Shown here piece by piece: positions 1,000 through 35,349 of a stretch of DNA of 64,000 nt (positions are counted from its first letter, which is position 1; every line of letters begins with the position of its first letter). This DNA is from Haliotis cracherodii. Its lineage: Eukaryota. A program made the translations under genes and the position numbers. Where the stretch lies: assembly GCF_022045235.1 (NCBI RefSeq), contig NW_027266275.1, positions 28,396,001 through 28,460,000 on the forward strand, read 5' to 3'. The notes under the pieces were generated by a model that saw only the letters and a list, made by a program, of their open reading frames with translations, searched no databases and had not been told where the DNA came from.

Positions 1000-2560
1000 A
1001 CAGAAATATGTGCTGGTCAGTGAGAGATGGGCTAGATGACAAAATGGATATATGATCTGGTCAGTGAGTGGAAATATGATGGGTGTGGGCAAGATAAATG
1101 TATATACAATGAGATGGGCTAGATGGAGAGATGGATATATGATGTGGTCAGTGAGTGTTAAACAATGAGATGGGCTAGATGGAGAGATGGATATACATGT
1201 ATGATGTGGTCAGAGAGTGTTAAACAAGATGGGGACATGGGCTAGATGGAGAGAGGGATATACGATGTGGTCAGTGAGTGTTATACAATGAGATGGGCTA
1301 AATCGAGAGATGGATATATAATGTGGTCAGTGAGTGTTAAACAACAAGATGGGGACATGGGCTAGATGGAGAGAGGGATATACGATGTGGTCAGTGAGTG
1401 TTTTATACAATGAGATGGGCTAGATGGAGAGATGGATATATGATGTGGTCAGTGAGTGTTATACAATGAGATGGGCTAGATGGAGAGATTGATATATGAT
1501 GTGGTCAGTGAGTTAAGCAAAGAGATCGGCTATATGGAGAGATGGATATATGATGTGGTCAGTGAGTGTTAAACAATGAGATGGGGACGAGCTAGAAAGA
1601 GAAATGGATATACGATGTGGTCAGTGAGCGTTTAACAATAAGATAGATAAATGAACTGGTCAGTGAGTGTTAAACAACAAGATGGGGACATGGGCTAGAT
1701 GAAGAGATGGATATACGATGTGGTCAGTGAGCGTTAAACAATAAGATAGAAAAATGAACTGGTCAGTGAGTGTTAAACAATAAGATGGGGACATGGGCTA
1801 GATGGAGAGATGGATAAATGATGTGGTCAGTGAGTGTTAAACAATGAGATGGGCTAGATGGAGAGATGGATATATGATGTGGTCAGTGAGTGTTATACAA
1901 TGAGATGGGCTAGATGGAGAGATTGATATATGATGTGGTCAGTGAGTTAAGCAAAGAGATCGGCTATATGGAGAGATGGATATATGATGTGGTCAGTGAG
2001 TGTTAAACAATGAGATGGGGACGAGCTAGAAAGAGAAATGGATATACGATGTGGTCAGTGAGCGTTTAACAATAAGATAGATAAATGAACTGGTCAGTGA
2101 GTGTTAAACAACAAGATGGGGACATGGGCTAGATGGAGAGATGGATATTCGATGTGGTCAGTGAGCGTTAAACAATAAGATAGAAAAATGAACTGGTCAG
2201 TGAGTGTTAAACAATAAGATGGGGACATGGGCTAGATGGAGAGATGGATAAATGATGTGGTCAGTGAGTATTAAACAATGAGATGGGGACATCGGCTAGA
2301 TAGGGAAATGGGTATATGTGGTCTGTTAGTGTTAAACAATAAGATGGGGATATGGGCTAGATAGAGAAATGAATTTAATGAGTTGGTCAGTGAGTATTAA
2401 ACACTAAGATGGGGATATGGGCTAGATAGAGAAATGGATATATGAGCTGATCAATTAGTGTTAAACAATGAGATGGGCTAGATAGAGAAATGGATATATG
2501 AGCTGATCAGTGAGTGTTAAACAATGGGATGGGGACTTGGACAAGATGGAGAGATGGAAA
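1000..2560. repeat. Minisatellite, ~50-60 bp unit (GATGTGGTCAGTGAGTGTTAAACAATGAGATGGGCTAGATGGAGAGATGGATATAT) with variant units
   Basis: The core tggtcagtgag recurs about every 37-60 bp over ~1.5 kb. A multi-unit block at ~1410-1830 is repeated at ~1835-2260. Confidence 0.95.
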
Positions 2561-7845: not shown

Positions 7846-9114
7846 ATCTACATAGGACACCTTCAGTTGAGAATAGTCACCTGCGAATAGTAACAGTTGA
7901 TAGAAATATGGTTGACATGTGTCCAGATACAAATGTTGCTTTTCCGATTATAGCAAATGATTTTTGTGCTAAATGTCTTGATTATATCTTCTGAATTAAC
8001 TTTTAATAAAGTTTCTGAGAAGCTAATACCATTTGAGAAAAATAACTGCTTCCCGGAGTTTGGATTATCTCCCTTGATTTTCCTTTAAACAAATGTTGAT
8101 GTTAATTTTAAGGCTCTGTTTCAAATTTTATATTTATATTTGTTCATATTTTCATCAGTTATTCCTCTCTAGAGCCAATCAACTATATATCATACAAGTT
8201 TTCATTTTAGCTATAAAAGAAAAATAGCTTATACATACCTTTATGTTCTTGAGGTCTATCTTTAAGACATTGTATGCTCGGCCGCCATTTTGAAGAAGGG
8301 AATACTTTGGGTTTTTTCAATTATATTTGTTTCTAACTTGATTATTTACGTGAAGACAATAAACTGCATGATTTTATATGCAAAACGTCAACATAATAAT
8401 AAATCGGTTCATGTTCTGCAAGAATTACTGATATTAACAAATTTATTTACTTCTTCGTCATTTTGAAGCATTATTTTAAATTTCTATGTGAATTTTCCTT
8501 TCAAAATTGTTAAATATACATTCTTTTGCATTTATCCTGGCAAGCTAATATAGATAGACTCATCATAAATGGGTTTTTTGTTATTGGTTCCACGTTTATG
8601 ACTATTATTACTTTTGTTGGCGGCCATCTTGGATTTGACCTATTTTCGGATGGTTCCCCATGTCCTATTTTGGTAAACTATTTTTTATTTTAATGTATAG
8701 GTGCCAAGGCACCAAAATCCAGCAATAAACCTTTTCCGTCAATTTTGTTGAACCTAGTCCTTTTAATTACTGGACTAAGAAGGCAACCGAGCCGTGCAAA
8801 TATCTGCCCATACATCTTCCCCCATGGGCATGACATGCCTGGTCGCGTAAGCATTTCAAACATGGTCATTCCTAGACGAGTTTCTCCGAAAGTTGGAAAA
8901 CTGCTCAGCCCCATATTCTACAAACATCTAACCATCTGGAAGTTATCAGAAACAATATGCAGGCTTCAGGCCTCTCCGAATCTGCCTGGTAACATTTGTC
9001 CACCGCCATCTGTGGCAACCGATGGTGTAAGTTCTGCCAACGGAGACGAAGACGAGGATTGGTAGATGGCGTTAAAACGATGCCTATGGTGGTGGATTTC
9101 CTCCACAACACTCT

Positions 9115-9262
9115 CTAAAAGACTCTCCACAAGACAAGTGGGATGACTTACACTTTCCATTAGTCAACATTCCTTATGTCGAGCAATATCCCTGCAGCTC
9201 CTAACTTTTGGGGTACAATCGAGCATGCTCTTTCTACCAAGATTTCAAAGAGCGTCATGGAC
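9115..9262 (+). pseudogene. Fragment of a Penelope-like retroelement reverse transcriptase C-terminal (thumb) region
   Basis: With frameshifts it reads RLSTR..KWDDLHFPLVNIPY..SNIPAAP..FGV..RACSFYQDFKERH, resembling the PLE motif LYDKRDDFNFPIVNFPFLSSNIPxxPAYGVY..RACS. Confidence 0.6.
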
Positions 9263-9339
9263 ATGGTCTATTATGGAGGATATTTCCAAATTTGACGCAT
9301 TGGTGACACAAATGATTCCCGATGTAAATTACCTGTTTT

Positions 9340-9472
9340 GTCAGGCGAACAATTGACTTGCCTTTGCACGTGTTTGTGAGAAAGCAAGAGAATTTAAAAA
9401 TCCAGCATTTCTGGGCATTGTTGGAGACTAATGAGCACGTTTTTACTGTGATGGAGCTGGCCGAAGGGGAAC
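9340..9472 (+). pseudogene. Scrambled relics of an older copy of the array kinase
   Basis: 9419-9472 (gttggagactaatgagcacgtttttactgtgatggagctggccgaaggggaac) aligns to the kinase codons for VLETDKHAFTVMELAEGG (10543-10598) with about 6 differences. ~9356-9370 (gacttgcctttgcacg) resembles the DFGLCT codons. Confidence 0.8.
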
Positions 9473-9487
9473 GTAGCTAGTTACCAA

Positions 9488-10270
9488 CTTGACCTTTAAC
9501 CTTTGATCGTCAAGAACCACCAAGAACCACCTTTGATTGTCCAGAATTACAATTACTACATCTCTCCTATTATAAAGTTGACCTTTGACCTTTGATTGTC
9601 CAATGTTGCTGGAATGCAAGTAAAACTAAAATCACAATCACATCGACCTTTTCCTTCATCTCCATTACAAAGTTGACCTTTGACCTTTGATTGTAAAGAA
9701 TCACAATCACATCATAGTTAAAATCAGGCCTCACAATCTCATCCTTCAAATACAAATTTGACCTTTGACCTCTGATTGTCAAGAATCACGAATGACATCG
9801 ACCCTTTCCATCATCTCCATTACAAAGTTGACCTTTGATTGTCAAGAATCACAATTACATAATATAGTTAAAGTTTTGACCTTTGACCTTTGTTTGTAAA
9901 GAATCACAATCGCATCCTCTTCATTACAAATTTGACCTTTGACCTCTGATTGTCAAGAATTACAATCGTAATATCGACCCTTTCACTTCTCGATTACAAA
10001 GTTGACCTTTGACCTTTGATTGTCATCACAACGTCGACCTTTCTATTTTCCAATCACAAAGTTGACCTTTGACCTTTGATTGTTTGCAAGTTGAAACATC
10101 AACAATAGCACTTCCATGACCTTTGGCCTTTCCATTTCCTGTCATTTGCCCCCTTGACCTTTAGAGCACTTGACCTTGAGTCACCTGATGACCGTGGCTT
10201 TGACCTTTGGGTCCCAATGTGTCTTGTTTGACCTTTATGTGCCCTGACCCCAAGAGGTCACATCGTCCGG
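9488..10270 (+). promoter_or_regulatory. Upstream region of copy 1: cluster of DR1 nuclear-receptor elements plus proximal half-sites
   Basis: Seven perfect TGACCTTTGACCT (= AGGTCA-A-AGGTCA on the minus strand); TGACCTTGA at 10171-10179 overlapping TGAGTCA at 10177-10183; everted TGACCC-N4-AGGTCA at 10245-10260. The motifs are seen directly; regulatory function is inferred. Confidence 0.6.
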
Positions 10271-10271
10271 G

Positions 10272-10310
10272 TATAAAAGGAAGAGATCTTCCATTTCCAG
10301 CATTTCATTT
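10272..10310 (+). promoter_or_regulatory. Core promoter of copy 1: TATA box and Inr-like sequence
   Basis: TATAAAAG at 10272, 57 bp upstream of the ATG, with pyrimidine-rich GCATTTCATTT about 30 bp downstream. Confidence 0.8.
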
Positions 10311-10328
10311 CAATATCATTCATCTATC

Positions 10329-11114
10329 ATGTCATCTATTAAGAACGTTTTGCGTTCGATTGGTTACCAAGTTAAATCCCTCTTAGGAGAGGGAAGCTTT
10401 GGTACGGTTTTGCTCTGTGAAAACATGGTTGACCTTTCGGAGGTTGCCATAAAAATCACAGAAAAAGTTCAGAGCTATGTCTCCAATGAGACGTTTGCTC
10501 TGAAGACTGTGAAACATCCCAACATTGTGGACATCTACGCAGTGTTGGAGACTGATAAGCACGCTTTTACTGTGATGGAGCTGGCCGAGGGGGGAAACCT
10601 CCTGGACCTGCTTGCACAGGAAAGCTTTAGCTTGTCTGAGGAGAGAGTCAAGGTGATCTTTTCCCAACTGGTGGAGGCTGTGAACGCCTGTCATCAGGAG
10701 GGGATTGCACACCGAGATCTTAAGCTGGAAAATGTCCTTTTGGACCTGGACGGCAATGTCAAGCTGTCTGACTTTGGCCTTTGCACGCGCCAAGAGCAAA
10801 GAGAGTCCAGTAATACCTTCTGTGGAACTGTAACTTACTCCTCCCCCGAGGTTCTAACCGGAGAGGAGTATGATGCATTCAAGCTAGACATCTGGAGTTT
10901 GGGGGTCATCCTCTATTCTCTGGTGTGTGGCTCCTTCCCCTTTGACGACTTCAGCATCAGCCAGATGGTTCAGCTGCAGAAAGATCACATCCTTCCATTT
11001 CCCGAGCCCATCAGCTCAGAGTGCAAGGATCTTATTCTGCAAATGTGCCAGCCCGATGTTGCTGGAAGGCCCTCTATCAGACAGGTTCAGAACTCTAGCT
11101 GGCTTTGCCAGTGA
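10329..11114 (+). CDS. TSSK1-like: Testis-specific serine/threonine kinase (TSSK1/2-like, CAMK group), copy 1, intronless, 261 aa
   Basis: All catalytic motifs are present: GEGSFG, VAIK (K42), alphaC E54, HRDLKLEN, DFG, TFCGT (T163), SPE and DIWSLGVILY. The C-lobe VCGSFPFDD..QKDH..FP..ECKDLI..QPDV..R..W closely follows vertebrate TSSK1/2. Confidence 0.93.
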   Translation: MSSIKNVLRSIGYQVKSLLGEGSFGTVLLCENMVDLSEVAIKITEKVQSYVSNETFALKTVKHPNIVDIYAVLETDKHAFTVMELAEGGNLLDLLAQESFSLSEERVKVIFSQLVEAVNACHQEGIAHRDLKLENVLLDLDGNVKLSDFGLCTRQEQRESSNTFCGTVTYSSPEVLTGEEYDAFKLDIWSLGVILYSLVCGSFPFDDFSISQMVQLQKDHILPFPEPISSECKDLILQMCQPDVAGRPSIRQVQNSSWLCQ

Positions 11115-11179
11115 AATCTAAAAGCCTAAAAAGCTAATAATATCAATAATAACACATCACACCCTATTAGACAATCAGA

Positions 11180-11900
11180 CTTGAACTTTTGACCTTTGAT
11201 TGTCAAGAATCACACAACATCGACCTTTTCCTTCATCTCCAAAGTTGACCTTTGACCTTTGATCACATCATATCAGTTAAAATGTTGACCTTTGACCTTT
11301 GTTTGTAAAGAATCACAATCTCATCCTTCAATTACAAATTTGACCTTTGACCTCTGATTGTGAAGAATCACGAATGACATCGACCCTTTCCATCATCTCC
11401 AATTACAAAGTTGACCTTTGACCTTTGATTGTCAAGAATCACAATTACATCATATAGTTAAAGTTTTGACCTTTGACCTTTGTTTGTAAAGAATCACAAT
11501 CGCATCCTCTTCATTACAAATTTGACCTTTGACCTCTGATTGTCAAGAATTACAATCGTAATATCGACCCTTTCACTTCTCGAATTACAAAGTTGACCTT
11601 TGACCTTTGATTGTCATCACAACGTCGACCTTTCTATTTTCCAATCACAAAGTTGACCTTTGACCTTTGATTGTTTGCAAGTTGAAACATCAACAATAGC
11701 ACTTCCATGACCTTTGGCCTTTCCATTTCCTGTCATTTGCCCCCTTGACCTTTAGAGCACTTGACCTTGAGTCACCTGATGACCGTGGCTTTGACCTTTG
11801 GGTCCCAATGTGTCTTGTTTGACCTTTATGTGCCCTGACCCCAAGAGGTCACATCGTCCGGGTATAAAAGGAAGAGATCTTCCATTTCCAGCATTTCATT
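11180..11900 (+). promoter_or_regulatory. Spacer/promoter of copy 2: 8 DR1 elements, TATA at 11863
   Basis: Eight perfect TGACCTTTGACCT, the same proximal sites as copy 1, and TATAAAAG at 11863. Confidence 0.65.
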
Positions 11901-11919
11901 TCAATATCATTCATCTATC

Positions 11920-12705
11920 ATGTCATCTATTAAGAACGTTTTGCGTTCGATTGGTTACCAAGTTAAATCCCTCTTAGGAGAGGGAAGCTTTGGTACGGTT
12001 TTGCTCTGTGAAAACATGGTTGACCTTTCGGAGGTTGCCATAAAAATCACAGAAAAAGTTCAGAGCTATGTCTCCAATGAGACGTTTGCTCTGAAGACTG
12101 TGAAACATCCCAACATTGTGGACATCTACGCAGTGTTGGAGACTGATAAGCACGCTTTTACTGTGATGGAGCTGGCCGAGGGGGGAAACCTCCTGGACCT
12201 GCTTGCACAGGAAAGCTTTAGCTTGTCTGAGGAGAGAGTCAAGGTGATCTTTTCCCAACTGGTGGAGGCTGTGAACGCCTGTCACCAGGAGGGGATTGCA
12301 CACCGAGATCTTAAGCTGGAAAATGTCCTTTTGGACCTGGACGGCAATGTCAAGCTGTCTGACTTTGGCCTTTGCACGCGCAAAGAGCAAAGAGAGTCCA
12401 GTAATACCTTCTGTGGAACTGTAACTTACTCCTCCCCCGAGGTTCTAACCGGAGAGGAGTATGATGCATTCAAGCTAGACATCTGGAGTTTGGGGGTCAT
12501 CCTCTATTCTCTGGTGTGTGGCTCCTTCCCCTTTGACGACTTCAGCATCAGCCAGATGGTTCAGCTGCAGAAAGATCACATCCTTCCATTTCCCGAGCAC
12601 ATCAGCTCAGAGTGCAAGGATCTTATTCTGCAAATGTGCCAGCCCGATGTTGCTGGAAGGCCCTCTATCAGACAGGTTCAGAACTCTAGCTGGCTTTGCC
12701 AGTGA
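11920..12705 (+). CDS. TSSK1-like: TSSK1/2-like kinase, copy 2 (Q155K, P227H)
   Basis: Intact 261-aa ORF with two substitutions relative to copies 1 and 5. Confidence 0.93.
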   Translation: MSSIKNVLRSIGYQVKSLLGEGSFGTVLLCENMVDLSEVAIKITEKVQSYVSNETFALKTVKHPNIVDIYAVLETDKHAFTVMELAEGGNLLDLLAQESFSLSEERVKVIFSQLVEAVNACHQEGIAHRDLKLENVLLDLDGNVKLSDFGLCTRKEQRESSNTFCGTVTYSSPEVLTGEEYDAFKLDIWSLGVILYSLVCGSFPFDDFSISQMVQLQKDHILPFPEHISSECKDLILQMCQPDVAGRPSIRQVQNSSWLCQ

Positions 12706-12769
12706 AATCTAAAAGCCTAAAAAGCTAATAATATCAATAATAACACATCACACCCTATTAGACAATCAG

Positions 12770-13497
12770 ACTTGAACTTTTGACCTTTGATTGTCAAGAA
12801 TCACAATCACAACATCGACCTTTTCCTTCATCTCCAAAGTTGACCTTTGACCTTTGATCACATCATATCATAGTTAAAATGTTGACCTTTGACCTTTGTT
12901 TGTCAAGAATCACAAACTCATCCTTCAATTACAAATTTGACCTTTGACCTCTGATTGTCAAGAATCACGAATGACATCGACCCTTTCCACCATCTCCAAT
13001 TACAAAGTTGACCTTTGACCTTTGATTGTCAAGAATCACAATCACATCATATAGTTAAAGTTTTGACCTTTGACCTTTGTTTGTAAAGAATCACAATCGC
13101 ATCCTCTTCATTACAAATTTGACCTTTGACCTCTGATTGTCAAGAATTACAATCGTAATATCGACCCTTTCACTTCTCGATTACAAAGTTGACCTTTGAC
13201 CTTTGATTGTCATCACAACGTCGACCTTTCTATTTTCCAATCACAAAGTTGACCTTTGACCTTTGATTGTTTGCAAGTTGAAACATCAACAATAGCACTT
13301 CCATGACCTTTGGCCTTTCCATTTCCTGTCATTTGCCCCCTTGACCTTTAGAGCACTTGACCTTGAGTCACCTGATGACCGTGGCTTTGACCTTTGGGTC
13401 CCAATGTGTCTTGTTTGACCTTTATGTGCCCTGACCCCAAGAGGTCACATCGTCCGGGTATAAAAGGAAGAGATCTTCCATTTCCAGCATTTCATTT
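12770..13497 (+). promoter_or_regulatory. Spacer/promoter of copy 3: 8 DR1 elements, TATA at 13459
   Basis: Eight perfect DR1 and TATAAAAG at 13459. Confidence 0.65.
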
Positions 13498-13515
13498 CAA
13501 TATCATTCATCTATC

Positions 13516-14301
13516 ATGTCATCTATTAAGAACGTATTGCGTTCGATTGGTTACCAAGTTAAATCCCTCTTAGGAGAGGGAAGCTTTGGTACGGTTTTGC
13601 TCTGTGAAAACATGGTTGACCTTTCGGAGGTTGCCATAAAAATCACAGAAAAAGTTCAGAGCTATGTCTCCAATGAGACGTTTGCTCTGAAGACTGTGAA
13701 ACATCCCAACATTGTGGACATCTACGCAGTGTTGGAGACTGATAAGCACGCTTTTACTGTGATGGAGCTGGCCGAGGGGGGAAACCTCCTGGACCTGCTT
13801 GCACAGGAAAGCTTTAGCTTGTCTGAGGAGAGAGTCAAGGTGATCTTTTCCCAACTGGTGGAGGCTGTGAACGCCTGTCACCAGGAGGGGGTTGCACACC
13901 GAGATCTTAAGCTGGAAAATGTCCTTTTGGACCTGGACGGCAATGTCAAGCTGTCTGACTTTGGCCTTTGCACGCGCCAAGAGCAAAGAGAGTCCAGTAA
14001 TACCTTCTGTGGAACTGTAACTTACTCCTCCCCCGAGGTTCTAACCGGAGAGGAGTATGATGCATTCAAGCTAGACATCTGGAGTTTGGGGGTCATCCTC
14101 TATTCTCTGGTGTGTGGCTCCTTCCCCTTTGACGACTTCAGCATCAGCCAGATGGTTCAGCTGCAGAAAGATCACATCCTTCCATTTCCCGAGCCCATCA
14201 GCTCAGAGTGCAAGGATCTTATTCTGCAAATGTGCCAGCCCGATGTTGCTGGAAGGCCCTCTATCAGACAGGTTCAGAACTCTAGCTGGCTTTGCCAGTG
14301 A
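13516..14301 (+). CDS. TSSK1-like: TSSK1/2-like kinase, copy 3 (I126V)
   Basis: Intact 261-aa ORF. Confidence 0.93.
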   Translation: MSSIKNVLRSIGYQVKSLLGEGSFGTVLLCENMVDLSEVAIKITEKVQSYVSNETFALKTVKHPNIVDIYAVLETDKHAFTVMELAEGGNLLDLLAQESFSLSEERVKVIFSQLVEAVNACHQEGVAHRDLKLENVLLDLDGNVKLSDFGLCTRQEQRESSNTFCGTVTYSSPEVLTGEEYDAFKLDIWSLGVILYSLVCGSFPFDDFSISQMVQLQKDHILPFPEPISSECKDLILQMCQPDVAGRPSIRQVQNSSWLCQ

Positions 14302-14364
14302 AATCTAAAAGCCTAAAAAGCTAATAATATCAATAATAACATCACACCCTATTAGACAATCAGA

Positions 14365-15090
14365 CTTGAACTTTTGACCTTTGATTGTCAAGAATCACAA
14401 TCACAACATCGACCTTTTCCTTCATCTCCAAAGTTGACCTTTGACCTTTGATCACATCATATCATAGTTAAAATGTTGACCTTTGACCTTTGTTTGTCAA
14501 GAATCACAATCTCATCCTTCATTACAAATTTGACCTTTGACCTCTGATTGTCAAGAATCACGAATGACATCGACCCTTTCCATCATCTCCAATTACAAAG
14601 TTGACCTTTGACCTTTGATTGTCAAGAATCACAATTACATCATATAGTTAAAGTTTTGACCTTTGACCTTTGTTTGTAAAGAATCACAATCGCATCCTCT
14701 TATTACAAATTTGACCTTTGACCTTTGATTGTCAAGAATTACAATCGTAATATCGACCCTTTCACTTCTCGAATTACAAAGTTGACCTTTGACCTTTGAT
14801 TGTCATCACAACGTCGACCTTTCTATTTTCCAATCACAAAGTTGACTTTTGACCTTTGATTGTTTGCAAGTTGAAACATCAACAATAGCACTTCCATGAC
14901 CTTTGGCCTTTCCATTTCCTGTCATTTGCCCCCTTGACCTTTAGAGCACTTGACCTTGAGTCACCTGATGACCGTGGCTTTGACCTTTGGGTCCCAATGT
15001 GTCTTGTTTGACCTTTATGTGCCCTGACCCCAAGAGGTCACATCGTCCGGGTATAAAAGGAAGAGATCTTCCATTTCCAGCATTTCATAT
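14365..15090 (+). promoter_or_regulatory. Spacer/promoter of copy 4: 7 perfect and 1 variant DR1, TATA at 15052
   Basis: The last DR1 reads TGACTTTTGACCT. TATAAAAG is at 15052 and the leader has a 6-bp deletion. Confidence 0.65.
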
Positions 15091-15102
15091 CATTCATCTA
15101 TC

Positions 15103-15888
15103 ATGTCATCTATTAAGAACGTTTTGCGTTCGATTGGTTACCAAGTTAAATCCCTCTTAGGAGAGGGAAGCTTTGGTACGGTTTTGCTCTGTGAAAACAT
15201 GGTTGACCTTTCGGAGGTTGCCATAAAAATCACAGAAAAAGTTCAGAGCTATGTCTCCAATGAGACGTTTGCTCTGAAGACTGTGAAACATCCCAACATT
15301 GTGGACATCTACGCAGTGTTGGAGACTGATAAGCACGCTTTTACTGTGATGGAGCTGGCCGAGGGGGGAAACCTCCTGGACCTGCTTGCACAGGAAAGCT
15401 TTAGCTTGTCTGAGGAGAGAGTCAAGGTGATCTTTTCCCAACTGGTGGAGGCTGTGAACGCCTGTCACCAGGTGGGGATTGCACACCGAGATCTTAAGCT
15501 GGAAAATGTCCTTTTGGACCTGGACGGCAATGTCAAGCTGTCTGACTTTGGCCTTTGCACGCGCCAAGAGCAAAGAGAGTCCAGTAATACCTTCTGTGGA
15601 ACTGTAACTTACTCCTCCCCCGAGGTTCTAACCGGAGAGGAGTATGATGCATTCAAGCTAGACATCTGGAGTTTGGGGGTCATCCTCTATTCTCTGGTGT
15701 GTGGCTCCTTCCCCTTTGACGACTTCAGCATCAGCCAGATGGTTCAGCTGCAGAAAGATCACATCCTTCCATTTCCCGAGCCCATCAGCTCAGAGTGCAA
15801 GGATCTTATTCTGCAAATGTGCCAGCCCGATGTTGCTGGAAGGCCCTCTATCAGACAGGTTCAGAACTCTAGCTGGCTTTGCCAGTGA
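15103..15888 (+). CDS. TSSK1-like: TSSK1/2-like kinase, copy 4 (E124V)
   Basis: Intact 261-aa ORF. Confidence 0.93.
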   Translation: MSSIKNVLRSIGYQVKSLLGEGSFGTVLLCENMVDLSEVAIKITEKVQSYVSNETFALKTVKHPNIVDIYAVLETDKHAFTVMELAEGGNLLDLLAQESFSLSEERVKVIFSQLVEAVNACHQVGIAHRDLKLENVLLDLDGNVKLSDFGLCTRQEQRESSNTFCGTVTYSSPEVLTGEEYDAFKLDIWSLGVILYSLVCGSFPFDDFSISQMVQLQKDHILPFPEPISSECKDLILQMCQPDVAGRPSIRQVQNSSWLCQ

Positions 15889-15953
15889 AATCTAAAAGCC
15901 TAAAAAGCTAATAATATCAATAATAACACATCACACCCTATTAGACAATCAGA

Positions 15954-16678
15954 CTTGAACTTTTGACCTTTGATTGTCAAGAATCACAATCACAACATCG
16001 ACCTTTTCCTTCATCTCCAAAGTTGACCTTTGACCTTTGATCACATCATATCATAGTTAAAATGTTGACCTTTGACCTTTGTTTGTCAAGAATCACAAAC
16101 ATCCTTCAATTACAAATTTGACCTTTGACCTCTGATTGTCAAGAATCACGAATGACATCGACCCTTTCCACCATCTCCAATTACAAAGTTGACCTTTGAC
16201 CTTTGATTGTCAAGAATCACAATCACATCATATAGTTAAAGTTTTGACCTTTGACCTTTGTTTGTAAAGAATCACAATCGCATCCTCTTCATTACAAATT
16301 TGACCTTTGACCTCTGATTGTCAAGAATTACAATCGTAATATCGACCCTTTCACTTCTCGATTACAAAGTTGACCTTTGACCTTTGATTGTCATCACAAC
16401 GTCGACCTTTCTATTTTCCAATCACAAAGTTGACCTTTGACCTTTGATTGTTTGCAAGTTGAAACATCAACAATAGCACTTCCATGACCTTTGGCCTTTC
16501 CATTTCCTGTCATTTGCCCCCTTGACCTTTAGAGCACTTGACCTTGAGTCACCTGATGACCGTGGCTTTGACCTTTGGGTCCCAATGTGTCTTGTTTGAC
16601 CTTTATGTGCCCTGACCCCAAGAGGTCACATCGTCCGGGTATAAAAGGAAGAGATCTTCCATTTCCAGCATTTCATTT
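15954..16678 (+). promoter_or_regulatory. Spacer/promoter of copy 5: 8 DR1 elements, TATA at 16640
   Basis: Eight perfect DR1 and TATAAAAG at 16640. Confidence 0.65.
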
Positions 16679-16696
16679 CAATATCATTCATCTATC

Positions 16697-17482
16697 ATGT
16701 CATCTATTAAGAACGTATTGCGTTCGATTGGTTACCAAGTTAAATCCCTCTTAGGAGAGGGAAGCTTTGGTACGGTTTTGCTCTGTGAAAACATGGTTGA
16801 CCTTTCGGAGGTTGCCATAAAAATCACAGAAAAAGTTCAGAGCTATGTCTCCAATGAGACGTTTGCTCTGAAGACTGTGAAACATCCCAACATTGTGGAC
16901 ATCTACGCAGTGTTGGAGACTGATAAGCACGCTTTTACTGTGATGGAGCTGGCCGAGGGGGGAAACCTCCTGGACCTGCTTGCACAGGAAAGCTTTAGCT
17001 TGTCTGAGGAGAGAGTCAAGGTGATCTTTTCCCAACTGGTGGAGGCTGTGAACGCCTGTCACCAGGAGGGGATTGCACACCGAGATCTTAAGCTGGAAAA
17101 TGTCCTTTTGGACCTGGACGGCAATGTCAAGCTGTCTGACTTTGGCCTTTGCACGCGCCAAGAGCAAAGAGAGTCCAGTAATACCTTCTGTGGAACTGTA
17201 ACTTACTCCTCCCCCGAGGTTCTAACCGGAGAGGAGTATGATGCATTCAAGCTAGACATCTGGAGTTTGGGGGTCATCCTCTATTCTCTGGTGTGTGGCT
17301 CCTTCCCCTTTGACGACTTCAGCATCAGCCAGATGGTTCAGCTGCAGAAAGATCACATCCTTCCATTTCCCGAGCCCATCAGCTCAGAGTGCAAGGATCT
17401 TATTCTGCAAATGTGCCAGCCCGATGTTGCTGGAAGGCCCTCTATCAGACAGGTTCAGAACTCTAGCTGGCTTTGCCAGTGA
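16697..17482 (+). CDS. TSSK1-like: TSSK1/2-like kinase, copy 5 (protein identical to copy 1)
   Basis: Intact 261-aa ORF. Confidence 0.93.
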   Translation: MSSIKNVLRSIGYQVKSLLGEGSFGTVLLCENMVDLSEVAIKITEKVQSYVSNETFALKTVKHPNIVDIYAVLETDKHAFTVMELAEGGNLLDLLAQESFSLSEERVKVIFSQLVEAVNACHQEGIAHRDLKLENVLLDLDGNVKLSDFGLCTRQEQRESSNTFCGTVTYSSPEVLTGEEYDAFKLDIWSLGVILYSLVCGSFPFDDFSISQMVQLQKDHILPFPEPISSECKDLILQMCQPDVAGRPSIRQVQNSSWLCQ

Positions 17483-17545
17483 AATCTAAAAGCCTAAAAA
17501 GCTAATAATATCAATAATAACATCACACCCTATTAGACAATCAGA

Positions 17546-18271
17546 CTTGAACTTTTGACCTTTGATTGTCAAGAATCACAATCACAACATCGACCTTTTC
17601 CTTCATCTCCAAAGTTGACCTTTGACCTTTGATCACATCATATCATAGTTAAAATGTTGACCTTTGACCTTTGTTTGTCAAGAATCACAATCTCATCCTT
17701 CATTACAAATTTGACCTTTGACCTCTGATTGTCAAGAATCACGAATGACATCGACCCTTTCCATCATCTCCAATTACAAAGTTGACCTTTGACCTTTGAT
17801 TGTCAAGAATCACAATTACATCATATAGTTAAAGTTTTGACCTTTGACCTTTGTTTGTAAAGAATCACAATCGCATCCTCTTATTACAAATTTGACCTTT
17901 GACCTTTGATTGTCAAGAATTACAATCGTAATATCGACCCTTTCACTTCTCGAATTACAAAGTTGACCTTTGACCTTTGATTGTCATCACAACGTCGACC
18001 TTTCTATTTTCCAATCACAAAGTTGACTTTTGACCTTTGATTGTTTGCAAGTTGAAACATCAACAATAGCACTTCCATGACCTTTGGCCTTTCCATTTCC
18101 TGTCATTTGCCCCCTTGACCTTTAGAGCACTTGACCTTGAGTCACCTGATGACCGTGGCTTTGACCTTTGGGTCCCAATGTGTCTTGTTTGACCTTTATG
18201 TGCCCTGACCCCAAGAGGTCACATCGTCCGGGTATAAAAGGAAGAGATCTTCCATTTCCAGCATTTCATTT
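17546..18271 (+). promoter_or_regulatory. Spacer/promoter of copy 6: 7 perfect and 1 variant DR1, TATA at 18233
   Basis: Same variant pattern as the spacer before copy 4. TATAAAAG is at 18233. Confidence 0.65.
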
Positions 18272-18289
18272 CAATATCATTCATCTATC

Positions 18290-19075
18290 ATGTCATCTAT
18301 TAAGAACGTTTTGCGTTCGATTGGTTACCAAGTTAAATCCCTCTTAGGAGAGGGAAGCTTTGGTACGGTTTTGCTCTGTGAAAACATGGTTGACCTTTCG
18401 GAGGTTGCCATAAAAATCACAGAAAAAGTTCAGAGCTATGTCTCCAATGAGACGTTTGCTCTGAAGACTGTGAAACATCCCAACATTGTGGACATCTACG
18501 CAGTGTTGGAGACTGATAAGCACGCTTTTACTGTGATGGAGCTGGCCGAGGGGGGAAACCTCCTGGACCTGCTTGCACAGGAAAGCTTTAGCTTGTCTGA
18601 GGAGAGAGTCAAGGTGATCTTTTCCCAACTGGTGGAGGCTGTGAACGCCTGTCACCAGGTGGGGATTGCACACCGAGATCTTAAGCTGGAAAATGTCCTT
18701 TTGGACCTGGACGGCAATGTCAAGCTGTCTGACTTTGGCCTTTGCACGCGCCAAGAGCAAAGAGAGTCCAGTAATACCTTCTGTGGAACTGTAACTTACT
18801 CCTCCCCCGAGGTTCTAACCGGAGAGGAGTATGATGCATTCAAGCTAGACATCTGGAGTTTGGGGGTCATCCTCTATTCTCTGGTGTGTGGCTCCTTCCC
18901 CTTTGATGACTTCAGCATCAGCCAGATGGTTCAGCTGCAGAAAGATCACATCCTTCCATTTCCCGAGCCCATCAGCTCAGAGTGCAAGGATCTTATTCTG
19001 CAAATGTGCCAGCCCGATGTTGCTGGAAGGCCCTCTATCAGACAGGTTCAGAACTCTAGCTGGCTTTGCCAGTGA
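18290..19075 (+). CDS. TSSK1-like: TSSK1/2-like kinase, copy 6 (E124V)
   Basis: Intact 261-aa ORF; protein identical to copy 4. Confidence 0.93.
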   Translation: MSSIKNVLRSIGYQVKSLLGEGSFGTVLLCENMVDLSEVAIKITEKVQSYVSNETFALKTVKHPNIVDIYAVLETDKHAFTVMELAEGGNLLDLLAQESFSLSEERVKVIFSQLVEAVNACHQVGIAHRDLKLENVLLDLDGNVKLSDFGLCTRQEQRESSNTFCGTVTYSSPEVLTGEEYDAFKLDIWSLGVILYSLVCGSFPFDDFSISQMVQLQKDHILPFPEPISSECKDLILQMCQPDVAGRPSIRQVQNSSWLCQ

Positions 19076-19139
19076 AATCTAAAAGCCTAAAAAGCTAATA
19101 ATATCAATAATAACACATCACACCCTATTAGACAATCAG

Positions 19140-19720
19140 ACTTGAACTTTTGACCTTTGATTGTCAAGAATCACAATCACAACATCGACCTTTTCCTTCA
19201 TCTCCAAAGTTGACCTTTGACCTTTGATCACATCATATCATAGTTAAAATGTTGACCTTTGACCTTTGTTTGTCAAGAATCACAAACATCCTTCAATTAC
19301 AAATTTGACCTTTGACCTCTGATTGTCAAGAATCACGAATGACATCGACCCTTTCCACCATCTCCAATTACAAAGTTGACCTTTGACCTTTGATTGTCAA
19401 GAATCACAACCACATCATATAGTTAAAGTTTTGACCTTTGACCTTTGTTTGTAAAGAATCACAATCGCATCCTCTTCATTACAAATTTGACCTTTGACCT
19501 CTGATTGTCAAGAATTACAATCGTAATATCGACCCTTTCACTTCTCGAATTACAAAGTTGACCTTTGACCTTTGATTGTCATCACAACGTCGACCTTTCT
19601 ATTTTCCAATCACAAAGTTGACCTTTGACCTTTGATTGTTTGCAAAGTTGACCATTGACCAAGAATCACAATCACATCATATTGTTAAAATGACCGATTG
19701 CAAGTTGAACATCGACATTA
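19140..19720 (+). repeat. Terminal DR1 spacer with no downstream core promoter or gene
   Basis: Eight perfect DR1 subrepeats are followed by diverged subrepeats at 19645-19720, with no TATA box or ORF after them. Confidence 0.9.
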
Positions 19721-19876
19721 CTACTACCCTTGTTCACTGTAGAGTTGCGTCGCTTAGTTGGGGTGTTTTTTCCACGGATTTCTGCGAATGAACAAACTAC
19801 GTCGCGGGAGTTTTACGGGACTCGCGACGTCAGCGCGTGGGGGAACATATGGCATTCATCAGAAATGTACAAGTCT

Positions 19877-19956
19877 TGCACAATGTTACTAAGATACTAG
19901 GAGTTTGTTCTTTATTCAGATAGAACAAACTCCTAGTATCTTAGTAACATTGTGCA
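19877..19956. repeat. Perfect inverted repeat: 35-bp arms, 10-nt loop
   Basis: TGCACAATGTTACTAAGATACTAGGAGTTTGTTCT (19877-19911), loop TTATTCAGAT, exact reverse complement at 19922-19956. Confidence 0.97.
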
Positions 19957-21812
19957 GGAGACCTGCAAGTTAGTCGATATCAAGAAGACACAAACAACAA
20001 GTTTTCACCCATGCTGCATTGGCCAGAGTGAGAGGATGATGTCAACAATCTTGTAACGGGATGACGAATGACCGCACCCAAGAGCGAGAGAGATGATACA
20101 ATCAGTATTTGGAAGAAAATGTACAGTTGATCGACATTGAAGATTGTGAAAATAAGCGGGAATATCCACCTGTGCATTTAAATCGTTCCAACCACATACA
20201 TTCAAATTTACTACAAAATGTACTCCGTTTTGCTACGCTACATCAGCTTCCAAAAGTAGGAGAGATATGAAAATCGGTATTGGAAGTAAAGCTACAGAAA
20301 AGATACGACAGCCCGTTCGCGGAACTCTCTATACTAAAAAGTGTAACGAAGGTATCACGCGTTAGGAAGGAGCTTGGACATTCTGAGTATGAAGGGAGAT
20401 AACTCTGTCAACCTTACTACTTCAAAGTCGTAGGCTCTGTGAAGCGTAACGATTTTTAATTCACTTGATGCCACACTGCCTTGTCAGCTCTTTCTGTGAT
20501 CATCCAGGCGTATCTGATAACACACTGACACAACAACAATGTCATCTGCGGTAGTCAGCCGCTTTATAGCACCGTGCAAACACAACCCATATTGCGCCAA
20601 TCTCCGCGAGGGTCCAGAGCGAGCTAATGGGATTTGAGTGTATTTGTCTTTATGTCTGCATGACGTATGCTCTATGCCGTATGCGACCCTCATTGACAAC
20701 CAGCAATCAATTTGTTCGTATTTAAAAAAATGTTTTTGAGCATCTGATATCTTTTGAGGTGCTGTAATATTATTCTTAATGAATAAATGTTTACGAAAAT
20801 CCACTACGATTTAATGTTTGACTGTGTAATTGTCTATGACAACAACGACTACACGACGAAGTACATTGATAGGGAGCGGGTTGGTATTATAGTTTGGTGT
20901 CTGATATCTCTTGAGTAAAATAGAAACTTTGAAACTAAGGTTCCTGACGTAAATGGTTAATGAAATAGACATTTTAACGACTAATATTTCTGTTCATAAG
21001 AATGTCTATTTCTGTCTATTTCTCTACATGTGTAGAATCCCAATTCGATACGGTACTTGGTGTTATTTATACGAGTATACAATAATGAAAACACAACGTG
21101 CCAAACATGAAATTTGTTAGTATCTAATATATTAATATATAAATGTGTGTTGTTAGGCAGGATATAATTTGATCGGTTTTGAGGTTCCACAGAAAACCAT
21201 CTTCAATCTTGACCGATAAGAATGTCACATCCTGGAGACAACGCATCAATTAAAACCCCTCATGACATCAGTGTACTCATTGGTCGAAATACCAGTTGTT
21301 CATAAGAATCCTGCTTATCACAATCCTGCTTGCAGTGGATGTATTTCACTTCAATGTCATCAAACGCACGTTTTGGTGTGGGAAATGGATATCAAATCTT
21401 TCGTATGATCCACCCGACTGTTTTTCGTTTCAATAGAAATTAAATGTTCATTTCAACATCGGATCAAGGGAATCACTTTCATTATGATCTAACAGTACAC
21501 GGATTAATGCAGTGGCCCCTCAGTAGAAATGGACTCGCCTTCATTAATGTATCAGCTATTCTTGGAGATTATGGTCTTTAACTCGATTATGCACTTTAAT
21601 AAACATGTAACTGCAAGTGTTTTAAAGTCGATTAAAATCTCATAATAAATTTTCAGGTCACTCTGCTGGTGCCATTCAATTACTATGAAAGCAGAAATCG
21701 ATACACCCTACGCCACATGCGGTTTCGTCTGACGGTCGAGCAATCCCAATGTGGTCCAGACAGCATTGCTTGTCGTCACGACGATAGTACCTCTCCAAAG
21801 TTTATGTCAATA

Positions 21813-26354: not shown

Positions 26355-26635
26355 GGGTAGTGGTGTCAGAGATGAATCCAGTGCCACAGATTTGGGGTGG
26401 GTAGTGGTGTCAGAAGTTGAATAGTGTGTCACAGATTGGGGTAGTGGTGTCCAAAGTTGAATATAGTGGCACAGATTTGGGGTAGTGGTGTCCAAAGTTG
26501 AATATAGTGGCACAGATTTGGGGTAGTGGTGTCCAAAGTTGAATAGTGTGTCACAGATTGGGGTAGTGGTGTCCAAAGTTGAATACAGTGCCACAAATTT
26601 GGGGTGGGTAGTGGTGTCAGTTGAATAGAGTGCCA
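26355..26635. repeat. Minisatellite, ~41-46 bp unit (GGGTAGTGGTGTCCAAAGTTGAATATAGTGGCACAGATTT), about 7 copies
   Basis: Directly visible tandem repeat. Confidence 0.9.
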
Positions 26636-32571: not shown

Positions 32572-32736
32572 TGTTTTGTTTTGTTTTTTGTTTATTGCCA
32601 CACTCACCTATTTTCCTGCTATATAGCATGATCGAGTCTGGACCAGACAATCCAGTGATTGACATCATGAGCATCAATACATGCAGTTCTGATACGATGA
32701 TCTGCATTCTATCAAGTCACCGAGTCTGACCGCCTG
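32572..32736 (-). mobile_element. SINE-like family A copy running into a derived minisatellite
   Basis: atcgagtctggaccagacaatccagtgattgacatcatgagcatc is the reverse complement of the family A core. Confidence 0.85.
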
Positions 32737-33900
32737 AACCATGTAGCTGCCTCTTACGACAAGGTTACGACCAGCCTAGGTTGCTCACTGAGGACCTGTG
32801 TTCTTACTCTGACCCTCCGAACCATGTAGCTGCCTCTTACGACAAGGTTACGACCAGCCTAGGTTGCTCACTGAGGACCTGTGTTCTTACTCTGACCCCT
32901 GAACCATGTAGCTGCCTCTTACGACAAGGTTACGACCAGCCTAGGTTGCTCACTGGGGACCTGTGTTCTTACTCTGACCCTCCGAACCATGTAGCTGCCT
33001 CTTAGTCTTACGACAAGGTTACGACCAGCCTAGGTTGCTCACTGGGGACCTATGTTCTTACTCTGACCCTCCGAACCATGTAGTTGCCTCTTACGACAAG
33101 GTTACGACCAGCCTAGGTTGCTCACTGGGGACCTATGTTCTTACTCTGACCCTTCGAACCATGTAGTTGCCTCTTACGACAAGGTTACGACCAGCCTAGG
33201 TTGCTCACTGGGGACCTGTGTTCTTACTCTGACCCTCTGAACCATGTAGTTGCCTCTTACGACAAGGTTACGACCAGCCTAGGTTGCTCACTGGGGACCT
33301 GTGTTCTTACTCTGACCCTTCGAACCATGTAGCTGCCTCTTACGACAAGGTTATGACCAGCCTAGGTTGCTCACTGGGGACCTGTGTTCTTACTCTGACC
33401 CTTCGAACCATGTAGCTGCCTCTTACGACAAGGTTACAACCAGCCTAGGTTGCTCACTGCGGACCTATGTTCTTACTCTGACTTTCTGAACCATGTAGCT
33501 GCCTCTTACGACAAGGTTACGACCAGCCTAGGTTGCTCACTGGGGACCTATGTTCTTACTCTGACCCCTGAACCATGTAGCTGCCTCTTACGACAAGGTT
33601 ACGACCAGCCTAGGTTGCTCACTGTGGACCTATGTTCTTACTCTGACCTTCTGAACCATGTAGCTGCCTCTTACGACAAGGTTACGACCAGCCTAGGTTG
33701 CTCACTGTGGACCTATGTTCTTACTCTGACCCCCTGAACCATGTAGCTGCCTCTTTCGACAAGGTTACGACCAGCCAAGGTTGCTCACTGTGGACCTATG
33801 TTCCTACTCTGACCCTCCGAAGCATGTAGCTGCCTCTTAGTCTTACGACAAGGTTACGACCAGCCAAGGTTGCTCACTGGGAACCTATGTTCTTACTCTT
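32737..33900. repeat. Minisatellite, ~82-83 bp unit, about 14 copies, derived from the 5' part of SINE family A
   Basis: Unit GAACCATGTAGCTGCCTCTTACGACAAGGTTACGACCAGCCTAGGTTGCTCACTGGGGACCTGTGTTCTTACTCTGACCCTCC. Its reverse complement contains CTTGTCGTAAGAGGC, as in family A at 44860-44875. Confidence 0.95.
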
Positions 33901-34914: not shown

Positions 34915-35349
34915 TTGGTGTTAAAAATGTGTGTTTGTATTGGAGAGAGATGACAAATGTTTATCTTCAAGTGAGACTGGTGTAAATTGTGTGTTTGTGT
35001 TGGAGTGAGACTACAGTCTGGTGTAAATTGTGTGTTTGTGTTGGAGTGAGACTACAATCTGGTGTAAATTGTGTGTTTGTGTTGGAGTGAGACTACAGTC
35101 TGGTGTAAATTGTGTGTTTGTGTTGGAGTGAGACTACAGAGTCTGGTGTAAATTGTGTGTTTGTGTTGGAGTGAGACTACAGAGTCTGGTGTAAATTGTG
35201 TGTTTGTGTTGGAGTGAGACTACAGAGTCTGGTGTAAATTGTGTGCTTGTGTTGGAGTGAGACTACAGAGTCTGGTGTAAATTGTGTGTTTGTGTTGGAG
35301 TGAGACTACAGAGTCTGGTGTAAATTGTGTGTTTGAGTTGGAGTGAGAC
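34915..35349. repeat. Minisatellite, 41-43 bp unit (CTGGTGTAAATTGTGTGTTTGTGTTGGAGTGAGACTACAGAGT), about 9-10 copies
   Basis: Directly visible tandem repeat. Confidence 0.95.

What the first reader, a model, noticed from the sequence alone, without database searches (positions are those of the whole stretch)
11180..11860. Spacer is a homotypic cluster of perfect nuclear-receptor DR1 elements (7-8 per gene, about 53 in the array), all co-oriented
Seen: TGACCTTTGACCT recurs every ~40-72 bp. The sequence between motifs differs from one subrepeat to the next while the 13-mer stays exact, which suggests constraint on the motif. Established: AGGTCA-A-AGGTCA is the consensus DR1 bound by RXR, HNF4, COUP-TF and the testicular receptors TR2/TR4 (NR2C); mollusc RXR is also the organotin target. 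Inference: a satellite-like sequence acts as a multimerised response element for each kinase copy, resembling a natural reporter construct. The array could also titrate the receptor.
Basis: partly seen in the sequence, partly recalled or inferred. Interest (0 to 1): 0.85.

Follow-up and report, generated by a model that had tools for sequence, protein, structure and literature searches.

The report
Perfect DR1 repeats before abalone kinase genes
Each copy of a six-fold amplified abalone sperm-type kinase gene is preceded by a short tandem repeat whose only unchanging part is a textbook nuclear-receptor binding site; this arrangement occurs nowhere else in the genome, but whether any receptor binds it is untested.

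Summary
Confirmed. TGACCTTTGACCT is the reverse complement of AGGTCAAAGGTCA, the "ideal" DR1. It occurs 53 times, all on the + strand, only inside a 10-kb tandem array of six intact, intronless 261-aa TSSK-like kinase genes in an abalone genome. Seven or eight copies lie 266-674 bp upstream of each ATG, followed by further half-sites and a TATA box.

The array holds 10% of the genome's 524 exact copies. Runs of closely spaced exact copies occur nowhere else in 1.18 Gb. The repeat unit matches no dispersed satellite or transposon.

Within one spacer the eight 40-71-bp monomers average about 62% identity outside a 14-nt block, (TTGACCT)x2, which is invariant. Three control minisatellites in the window show nothing similar, so selection on the block is likely.

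Limits:
- The gene units are too young (98-99% alike) to show extra constraint.
- One DR1 has mutated in two units, and edge copies have decayed.
- Distant TSSK paralogues lack the motif.
- Orthologue DNA could not be fetched.
- Binding, expression and transcript ends remain unknown.

Best reading (about 0.45): a minisatellite response module for an NR2-type nuclear receptor. Rivals are another factor (an HMG/SOX-like site overlaps), a neutral minisatellite, or a 3'UTR element. Receptor titration and the organotin link are speculation.

The parts
9470..19720 (+). Whole tandem array: seven spacers and six kinase genes, unit 1.59 kb. Units 3-4 and 5-6 look like a duplicated two-unit block.
9470..10328 (+). 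Spacer 1, the older copy (93% identical to spacer 2). It has seven exact DR1s (9579-10075), one DR1 collapsed to a single TTGACCT near 9828, and a one-mismatch copy at 9490.
10329..11114 (+). Kinase gene 1 (261 aa, intronless, TSSK-like)
11182..11680 (+). DR1 minisatellite of spacer 2: a degenerate monomer (TGAACTTTTGACCT at 11182) plus eight monomers of 40-71 bp. Each carries an exact TGACCTTTGACCT, starting at 11246, 11286, 11341, 11412, 11467, 11523, 11594 and 11654. A three-monomer unit of about 181 bp is repeated twice.
11681..11862 (+). Non-repetitive proximal promoter with further same-strand half-sites. These are TGACCTTTGGCCT (11708, DR1 with one mismatch), TGACCTTT (11746, 11792, 11820), TGACCTTGA (11762, reverse complement TCAAGGTCA), TGACCG (11780), and TGACCC-caag-AGGTCA (11836-11851).
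11863..11869 (+). TATAAAA box, 57 bp before the ATG of gene 2. The same box precedes every gene.
11920..12705 (+). Kinase gene 2 (261 aa). Pkinase domain E = 2e-68; GxGxxG, VAIK, HRD, DFG and SPE motifs all present.
12841..13262 (+). DR1 cluster of spacer 3 (8 exact)
13516..14301 (+). Kinase gene 3
14435..14855 (+). DR1 cluster of spacer 4: 7 exact copies, and the eighth mutated to TGACTTTTGACCT at 14843
15103..15888 (+). Kinase gene 4
16024..16443 (+). DR1 cluster of spacer 5 (8 exact)
16697..17482 (+). Kinase gene 5
17616..18036 (+). DR1 cluster of spacer 6: 7 exact copies, and the eighth mutated at 18024
18290..19075 (+). Kinase gene 6
19211..19631 (+). DR1 cluster of terminal spacer 7 (8 exact). 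No proximal promoter and no gene follow it. A decayed monomer (TGACCATTGACCA) lies at about 19645.

Best explanation
The spacer in front of each kinase gene is a promoter-upstream minisatellite. Its selectively maintained core is a consensus DR1 site, AGGTCA-A-AGGTCA on the antisense strand.

The most likely function is a multimerised docking platform. Eight dimer sites, plus single half-sites next to the TATA box, would bind a nuclear receptor of the AGGTCA-reading NR2 group: RXR, TR2/4-type, COUP-TF or HNF4. Which receptor, and whether it activates or represses, is unknown. The module would set the transcription of each copy of a recently amplified, probably male-germline, TSSK-like kinase.

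Shown: the motif, its position, its uniqueness in the genome, and its invariance among otherwise diverged monomers.

Inferred: protein binding, the identity of the binder, the effect on transcription, and testis specificity.
For: 1. There are 53 exact consensus DR1s, against 0 expected in shuffles. The sequence is identical to the 'ideal DR1' bound by TR4 (PMC9943680), and gastropod RXRs bind DR1 (PMC4388693, PMC5398557).
2. Position: the sites lie at -674 to -266 from each ATG. A non-repeated 180-bp stretch follows with seven more same-strand TGACC half-sites, including a one-mismatch DR1 at -212, and then TATAAAA at -57. TGACCT density is 27 per kb here against 0.34 per kb in the rest of the window.
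3. Constraint among monomers: 14 of 14 block columns are invariant against 6 of 42 outside. Pairwise identity outside the block is 42-88%. Three control minisatellites in the same window have higher identity (0.81-0.94) but shorter invariant runs of 2-12 columns.
4. It is not a dispersed repeat. BLAST of the spacer finds only the seven spacers plus one pseudogene fragment. The 32-nt core with up to 3 mismatches matches only there.
5. Exact DR1 pairs 27-88 bp apart occur only in this array, 51 of 51 hits. Only four tiny sites elsewhere have pairs 0-26 bp apart. The array holds 53 of the genome's 524 exact copies.
6. Cognate readers exist: 57 zf-C4 matches, including clear COUP-TF-type and HNF4-type DNA-binding domains.
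7. In contigs of three other organism labels at 98-99% identity, none of 19 listed substitution positions and none of 11 indel places in the spacer falls inside a DR1. This is weak: P is about 0.05, and assembly of repeats biases it.
Against: - There are no binding, chromatin, expression or reporter data.
- Between the young units the DR1 columns change as often as the rest (1/104 against 6/707). One DR1 carries a C>T change in two units.
- Monomers at the array edges and in the dispersed pseudogene fragment have decayed DR1s.
- Three intact TSSK paralogues (36-39% identity) have no TGACCT in 3 kb upstream, so there is no family-wide DR1 code.
- A DR1 is by construction a 7-bp unit repeated twice, so part of its origin may be slippage.
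- The conserved core extends beyond the 13-mer into CTTTGWT/ATTGT, so another factor may be the real reader.
- The array contains no canonical AATAAA or ATTAAA. The spacer could therefore be transcribed as 3'UTR or read-through.
Confidence: 0.45

Rival explanations
1. Neutral minisatellite. A monomer that happened to contain (TTGACCT)x2 expanded by slippage and unequal crossing-over and was then carried along when the gene unit was amplified. The DR1 match has no receptor-related function.
For: - The repeat has a higher-order structure of about 181 bp repeated twice, and monomer lengths vary.
- Monomer number varies in contigs of related organisms, with skips of 59-162 bp.
- Between units there is no excess conservation of DR1 columns.
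- DR1s do mutate or collapse.
- (TTGACCT)4 microsatellite-like sites exist elsewhere in the genome.
Against: - Neutral turnover homogenises whole monomers. It does not explain 14 of 14 invariant columns next to 36 of 42 variable ones.
- More homogeneous control minisatellites in the same window have shorter invariant runs.
- Further TGACCT half-sites occur in the non-repeated proximal promoter.
Confidence: 0.2
2. The array is a functional cis-regulatory element read by something other than a DR1-binding dimer. One option is monomeric receptors on extended half-sites: AAAGGTCA for the NR4A type, TCAAGGTCA for the NR5A/ERR/GCNF type. Another is an HMG-box factor (SOX30/SoxH or TCF) on the overlapping CTTTGAT/CTTTGTT and ATTGT sequence. 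A composite of receptor and HMG factor is also possible.
For: - The semi-conserved flank reads yTGwTTGTcAAGAATCAC. CTTTGAT or CTTTGTT is present in 6 of 8 monomers, and ATTGT or TTTGT in 7 of 8.
- Every half-site carries the AAAGGTCA extension.
- A perfect TCAAGGTCA lies at 11762-11770 on the minus strand.
- Sox-30 and Tssk genes are among the most male-gonad-biased transcripts in another abalone (PMC11989308).
Against: - The only fully invariant stretch is exactly the two half-sites.
- The HMG-like core is broken (CTCTGAT) in the two type-B monomers, and the flank is lost in monomer 1.
Confidence: 0.15
3. RNA-level element. The spacer is transcribed as a long 3'UTR of the upstream copy or as read-through RNA. 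The repeated UGACCUUUGACCU would then be a binding site for an RNA-binding protein or a small RNA that controls storage or translation of the kinase mRNA.
For: - There is no AATAAA or ATTAAA anywhere in 9400-19800. Only AATAAT/AATAAC lie just after the stop codon, plus TATAAA at 11863.
- Contigs of runs guessed to be RNA cover the spacer as well as the gene, and cross the unit junction.
- All motifs are on the sense strand.
Against: - The RNA status of those runs is only a guess. Their contig ends coincide with repeat boundaries.
- The TATA box plus a short leader fits a promoter reading.
- I know of no RNA motif of this sequence (own knowledge, not tested).
- Rfam finds nothing.
Confidence: 0.08
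4. The spacer derives from a satellite or transposon (Helentron/MITE-type subterminal repeats) that captured the kinase gene.
For: - A rearranged fragment of the array lies 113 kb away next to Tc1/mariner-like sequence.
- A low-copy repeat abuts the right end of the array.
Against: No other copy of the spacer or of its 32-nt core exists in the 1.18-Gb genome. No transposase ORF lies in or next to the array.
Confidence: 0.03

Closest known systems
Canonical DR1 nuclear-receptor response element (AGGTCA-A-AGGTCA; the 'ideal DR1' used for TR4, RXR, HNF4 and COUP-TF)
   Same: The 13-nt sequence is identical, including the A spacer (PMC9943680). Gastropod RXRs bind this element (PMC4388693, PMC5398557).
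   Different: Known natural DR1s are usually single and imperfect. Here there are eight perfect copies per promoter and 53 in 10 kb, and no binding has been shown.
RXR response element of the rat CRBPII promoter (several AGGTCA-like half-sites in tandem, 1 nt apart). From my own knowledge; CRBPII is also cited as a strong TR4 target in PMC9943680.
   Same: A natural promoter element made of multiplied DR1-spaced half-sites that confers a strong receptor response.
   Different: In CRBPII the half-sites are contiguous within about 35 bp. Here complete DR1s are spread 40-71 bp apart in minisatellite monomers over about 430 bp.
Repeated enhancer elements in the intergenic spacer of tandem gene arrays, e.g. 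the 60/81-bp repeats of Xenopus rDNA (own knowledge)
   Same: Subrepeats lying between the end of one gene unit and the promoter of the next, co-amplified with the gene, each carrying a factor-binding core.
   Different: Those serve RNA polymerase I and bind UBF. This is a polymerase II-type TATA promoter of a protein-coding gene, with a nuclear-receptor-type core.
Synthetic multimerised DR1/PPRE reporter constructs (own knowledge)
   Same: Several co-oriented perfect DR1s upstream of a minimal TATA promoter.
   Different: This arrangement is natural and the spacing is irregular. The sites sit in semi-conserved flanks, and activity is untested.
Ampliconic testis gene families and intronless TSSK retrogenes (TSSK1/2 in mammals; PMC6905558 for the abalone TSSK1-like gene)
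   Same: An intronless TSSK-type kinase domain (41-43% identity to vertebrate TSSK1/2) in a young head-to-tail array. It is also multi-copy in H. asinina.
   Different: The published abalone TSSK1-like gene has 4 exons and 359 aa, so it is a different gene. Testis expression of the gene studied here has not been shown.

Membership tests
DR1 nuclear-receptor response element | Two AGGTCA half-sites as a direct repeat with a 1-nt spacer (A preferred) | tested here: met
   53 exact TGACCTTTGACCT, the reverse complement of AGGTCAAAGGTCA. The same sequence is the ideal DR1 of PMC9943680.
DR1 nuclear-receptor response element | Location in a regulatory region of a gene | tested here: met
   The sites lie at -674 to -266 from each ATG, upstream of TATAAAA at -57. 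The transcription start site itself was not mapped.
DR1 nuclear-receptor response element | Cognate AGGTCA-reading receptors encoded by the organism | tested here: met
   57 zf-C4 matches. A COUP-TF-type DNA-binding domain scores 149 bits and an HNF4-type one scores 143 bits. RXR and TR2/4 orthologues were not individually typed here; they are known in gastropods (PMC4388693).
DR1 nuclear-receptor response element | Sequence conservation beyond the neutral level | tested here: inconclusive
   Strong among monomers (14/14 against 6/42 invariant columns). Absent between the young units (1/104 against 6/707). Weak across closely related organisms. Distant orthologues were unreachable.
DR1 nuclear-receptor response element | Receptor binding in vitro or in vivo | not testable with these tools
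   Needs EMSA, DAP-seq or CUT&RUN.
DR1 nuclear-receptor response element | Receptor- or ligand-dependent change in transcription | not testable with these tools
   Needs a reporter assay. Even the RNA status of the public runs was only guessed.
Dispersed satellite or transposon-borne repeat (Helentron/MITE core) | Many gene-independent copies elsewhere in the genome | tested here: not met
   The spacer and its 32-nt core are found only in this array and in one fragment derived from it. The metagenome scan returned nothing.
Minisatellite (tandem units of 10-100 bp) | Head-to-tail units with length and copy-number variation | tested here: met
   TRF reports periods of 55 and about 181 bp. There are 7-8 exact DR1s per spacer. 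Monomer-sized skips appear in contigs of other organisms.
HMG-box (SOX/TCF) site cluster | CTTTGWW / ATTGT core kept in all repeats | tested here: inconclusive
   CTTTGAT or CTTTGTT is present in 6 of 8 monomers. It reads CTCTGAT in two monomers, and the ATTGT flank is lost in one.
TSSK-type protein kinase (the gene served by the spacer) | Complete Ser/Thr kinase domain with catalytic motifs; best named relatives are TSSK | tested here: met
   Pkinase E = 2e-68. GxGxxG, VAIK, HRD, DFG and SPE are present. Top named hits are TSSK1/2-like at 41-43% identity, and Haliotis TSSK2-like at 81%. Testis expression was not tested.

The most novel reading that the evidence does not exclude
The DR1 minisatellite is a natural multimerised, ligand-responsive enhancer that was co-amplified with a male-germline kinase. 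It would be read by abalone RXR or the TR2/4-type receptor. The kinase array would then be a direct high-gain readout of retinoid or organotin-sensitive nuclear-receptor signalling in the gonad. With 53 perfect sites it might also act as a local receptor sink.
Probability: 0.1. Interest if true: 0.7.

Novelty: new member of a known kind. Interest (0 to 1): 0.45.

Why it matters
If a receptor does bind, this is an unusually clean natural enhancer. It has eight perfect, co-oriented consensus sites per promoter, repeated over six gene copies, in an animal group where nuclear-receptor target genes are almost unknown and where RXR is the accepted target of organotin pollutants.

It would give mollusc endocrinology a concrete target promoter and a ready-made reporter. 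It would also show a regulatory minisatellite being built and then amplified together with its gene. If no receptor binds, it is a useful warning that a perfect consensus can be kept in a repeat for other reasons.

Tried and rejected
This was the test I most wanted.
- Metagenome scans. A scan for the monomer core found nothing. A protein-based scan found only unrelated kinases at 27-28% identity.
- Paralogue footprinting. The only near copy (C12:28.53 Mb) is a rearranged pseudogene fragment without an upstream region. The next paralogues are 36-39% identical and have no TGACCT upstream, so no family-wide code emerged.
- Expression. No run is on record as RNA. Runs guessed to be RNA hold the spacer as well as the gene, at depths compatible with DNA, and their contig ends sit at repeat boundaries. 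No start, end or tissue could be read. The single read-laying run was used, on 1,901 letters.
- Between-unit and between-organism substitution counts are too few to test constraint.
- Rfam finds no RNA family in 9000-20500.
- The published abalone TSSK1-like gene (PMC6905558) is a different gene with 4 exons and 359 aa.
- Satellite or Helentron origin is rejected for this genome.
- Co-orientation was rejected as evidence, because it follows from tandem duplication.

Full report
**What is there.** The window is G000:C12:28396001-28460000 of a 1.18-Gb abalone (Haliotis) genome. Earlier notes of this scan call it black abalone; I did not check that. Between 9470 and 19720 lies a head-to-tail array with a 1.59-kb unit.

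- There are six intact 261-aa ORFs, with ATGs at 10329, 11920, 13516, 15103, 16697 and 18290. Seven spacers separate and flank them.
- The ORF is a complete protein-kinase domain: Pkinase E = 2e-68, with GxGxxG, VAIK, HRD, DFG and SPE present.
- Its named relatives are TSSK1/2-like kinases. Identity is 81% to H. asinina 'TSSK2-like' and 41-43% to vertebrate TSSK1/2.
- The six copies differ at 7 of 786 sites.
- The shared variants and the spacer alignment show that units 3-4 and 5-6 are a duplicated two-unit block.
- H. asinina has at least seven accessions in one cluster of 90% identity or more on one chromosome, so the gene is multi-copy there too.

**Check of the observation.**

- TGACCTTTGACCT occurs 53 times, all on +, against 0.00 expected in shuffles. 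With one mismatch allowed there are 62 matches, all on + and all inside the array.
- Each spacer has 7-8 exact copies, 40-71 bp apart. In the older spacer 1 they are 56-118 bp apart.
- In the stated region the eight copies lie at -674 to -266 from the ATG.
- Downstream of them lies a non-repeated 180-bp stretch with seven more same-strand TGACC half-sites. They include a one-mismatch DR1 (TGACCTTTGGCCT at 11708), a TGACCTTGA (TCAAGGTCA on the other strand) and a TGACCC-n4-AGGTCA pair. TATAAAA follows at 11863, 57 bp before the ATG.
- TGACCT density in the spacer is 27 per kb, against 0.34 per kb in the rest of the window.

**Is it a genome-wide repeat?** No.

- The genome has 524 exact 13-mers, against 304 for the reversed control. 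This 10-kb array holds 10% of them, a density roughly 13,000 times that of the rest of the genome.
- Two exact copies 27-57 bp apart occur 33 times, all here. Pairs 58-88 bp apart occur 18 times, all here. Pairs 0-26 bp apart occur at only four small sites elsewhere, of (TTGACCT)4 type.
- BLAST of the whole spacer finds only the seven spacers and one fragment 113 kb away. The 32-nt monomer core with up to three mismatches gives the same result.
- That fragment is a rearranged, internally deleted piece of the array next to Tc1/mariner-like sequence. Its DR1s are decayed (TGACCTTTGACCC; TTTAACCT).

**Is the motif constrained?** Three timescales give different answers.

- *(a) Among the eight monomers of one spacer.* These are old enough to be 42-88% identical outside the core. 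The 14 columns TTGACCTTTGACCT are all invariant, while 36 of the other 42 aligned columns vary.
  - As an empirical control I analysed three other minisatellites in this window in the same way. Their monomers are more alike (0.81-0.94), yet their longest invariant runs are only 2-12 columns.
  - This is the real evidence for selection on the block. The block coincides exactly with the two half-sites plus one base.
  - About 10 nt 5' (aTTACAAAgT) and 20 nt 3' (yTGwTTGTcAAGAATCAC) are semi-conserved, so the functional core may be larger than the 13-mer.
- *(b) Between gene units (98-99% identical).* One of 104 DR1 columns is substituted, against 6 of 707 others. No signal is visible, and none could be expected at this age.
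  - The one hit is a C>T in DR1 no. 8 of spacers 4 and 6.
  - Spacer 1 has one DR1 collapsed by exactly 7 bp and lacks another. The first monomer is exact in spacer 1 but degenerate (TGAACTTTTGACCT) in the others.
- *(c) Between organisms.* Contigs of runs under four organism labels hold the unit at about 98-99% identity and show the tandem junction.
  - None of the 19 listed substitution positions and none of the 11 indel places in the spacer falls inside a DR1.
  - This is only marginal (P about 0.05), and repeat assembly biases it.
  - Monomer-sized skips in these contigs show that the number of monomers varies.

**What could read it.**

- The sequence equals the 'ideal DR1 response element' used for TR4, a receptor concentrated in testis (PMC9943680).
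- Gastropod RXRs bind DR1 as homodimers. Gastropods have one HNF4, RXR, TR2/4-type and COUP-TF each (PMC4388693, PMC5398557).
- This genome has 57 matches to the receptor zinc-finger domain. They include clear COUP-TF-type and HNF4-type DNA-binding domains.
- Every half-site also carries the AAAGGTCA extension that monomeric receptors use.
- The 3' flank overlaps CTTTGAT/CTTTGTT and ATTGT, which look like HMG-box (TCF/SOX) cores (own knowledge). Sox-30 and Tssk genes are among the most male-biased gonad transcripts in H. discus hannai (PMC11989308). However, these flanks are broken in two or three of the eight monomers, unlike the DR1 block.

**What could not be settled.**

- Expression, tissue, transcription start and poly(A) site are all unknown. 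No run is on record as RNA, and the runs guessed to be RNA cover spacer and gene alike.
- The array has no AATAAA or ATTAAA at all. It has only AATAAT/AATAAC just after the stop codon, and the TATAAA itself. A transcribed spacer, as 3'UTR or read-through, is therefore not excluded.
- Rfam finds nothing in the array.
- Three intact distant TSSK paralogues have no TGACCT within 3 kb upstream. The DR1 cluster is therefore a private feature of this young gene family, not a shared TSSK code.
- The decisive comparison is with the upstream regions of the H. asinina and H. rubra orthologues.

**Verdict.** The cluster is unique in the genome, and its DR1 block is kept while the rest of the monomer drifts. 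The most likely reading (about 0.45) is a promoter-upstream minisatellite that serves as a multimerised nuclear-receptor response module for each kinase copy.

The rivals are:
- a neutral minisatellite (0.2);
- a different reader, such as monomeric receptors or an HMG/SOX factor (0.15);
- an RNA-level element (0.08);
- a transposon or satellite origin (0.03, largely refuted).

Receptor titration and an organotin link are not supported by anything I could test. In kind this is a new instance of known things: a DR1 element, a homotypic site cluster, and enhancer subrepeats in the spacer of a tandem gene array. It is unusually clean and directly testable.

Noticed in passing
L001:2330-3130 (= G000:C12:28528830-28529630, minus strand): A rearranged pseudogene fragment of the array lies 113 kb downstream. 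It starts 17 nt before the ATG, lacks codons 87-175, and keeps the 3' end of the gene plus about 2.5 decayed monomers. A second kinase piece follows, and then Tc1/mariner-like transposase remains.
   Followed up: partly
window 9380-9470: The left edge of the array begins with a short, decayed piece of the kinase coding sequence (around ...FTVMELAEGG), joined directly to the oldest and most diverged monomers (TGACCTTTAACCT at 9490).
   Followed up: partly
window 9400-19800: There is no canonical AATAAA or ATTAAA poly(A) signal anywhere in the six-gene array. Only AATAAT/AATAAC lie 20-35 nt after each stop codon, plus the TATAAA of the next promoter.
   Followed up: partly
window 19874-19959: A 38-nt inverted repeat (97% complementary, 10-nt loop) lies just beyond the right end of the array. 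The sequence from about 19910 belongs to a low-copy dispersed repeat with five other copies at 82-86% identity.
   Followed up: partly
G000:C3:43670394, 43828525, 43984643, 44135509, 44300523 (all minus strand): Exact 13-mer hits recur every 150-165 kb on one strand, which suggests a large segmental tandem repeat on contig 3.
   Followed up: no
window 12706-19075: Shared variants show that the array grew by duplicating a two-unit (3.18-kb) block. Spacers 3, 5 and 7 match each other, as do spacers 4 and 6, genes 3 and 5, and genes 4 and 6.
   Followed up: partly
window 1106-2533; 32725-33899; 34973-35349; 42926-43238; 51023-51506: Several unrelated minisatellites are present, with periods of 56, 83, 43, 22/40 and 60 bp. 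Three minisatellites (1106-2533, 26355-26605, 51023-51506) served as controls. The window has no ORF of 180 aa or more outside the kinase array.
   Followed up: partly
proteins P0002, P0121-P0123 (H. asinina): H. asinina has at least seven accessions of this 260-263-aa kinase, at 90% identity or more, on one 79.6-Mb chromosome. The multi-copy state is therefore shared across distant Haliotis species, or arose twice.
   Followed up: no
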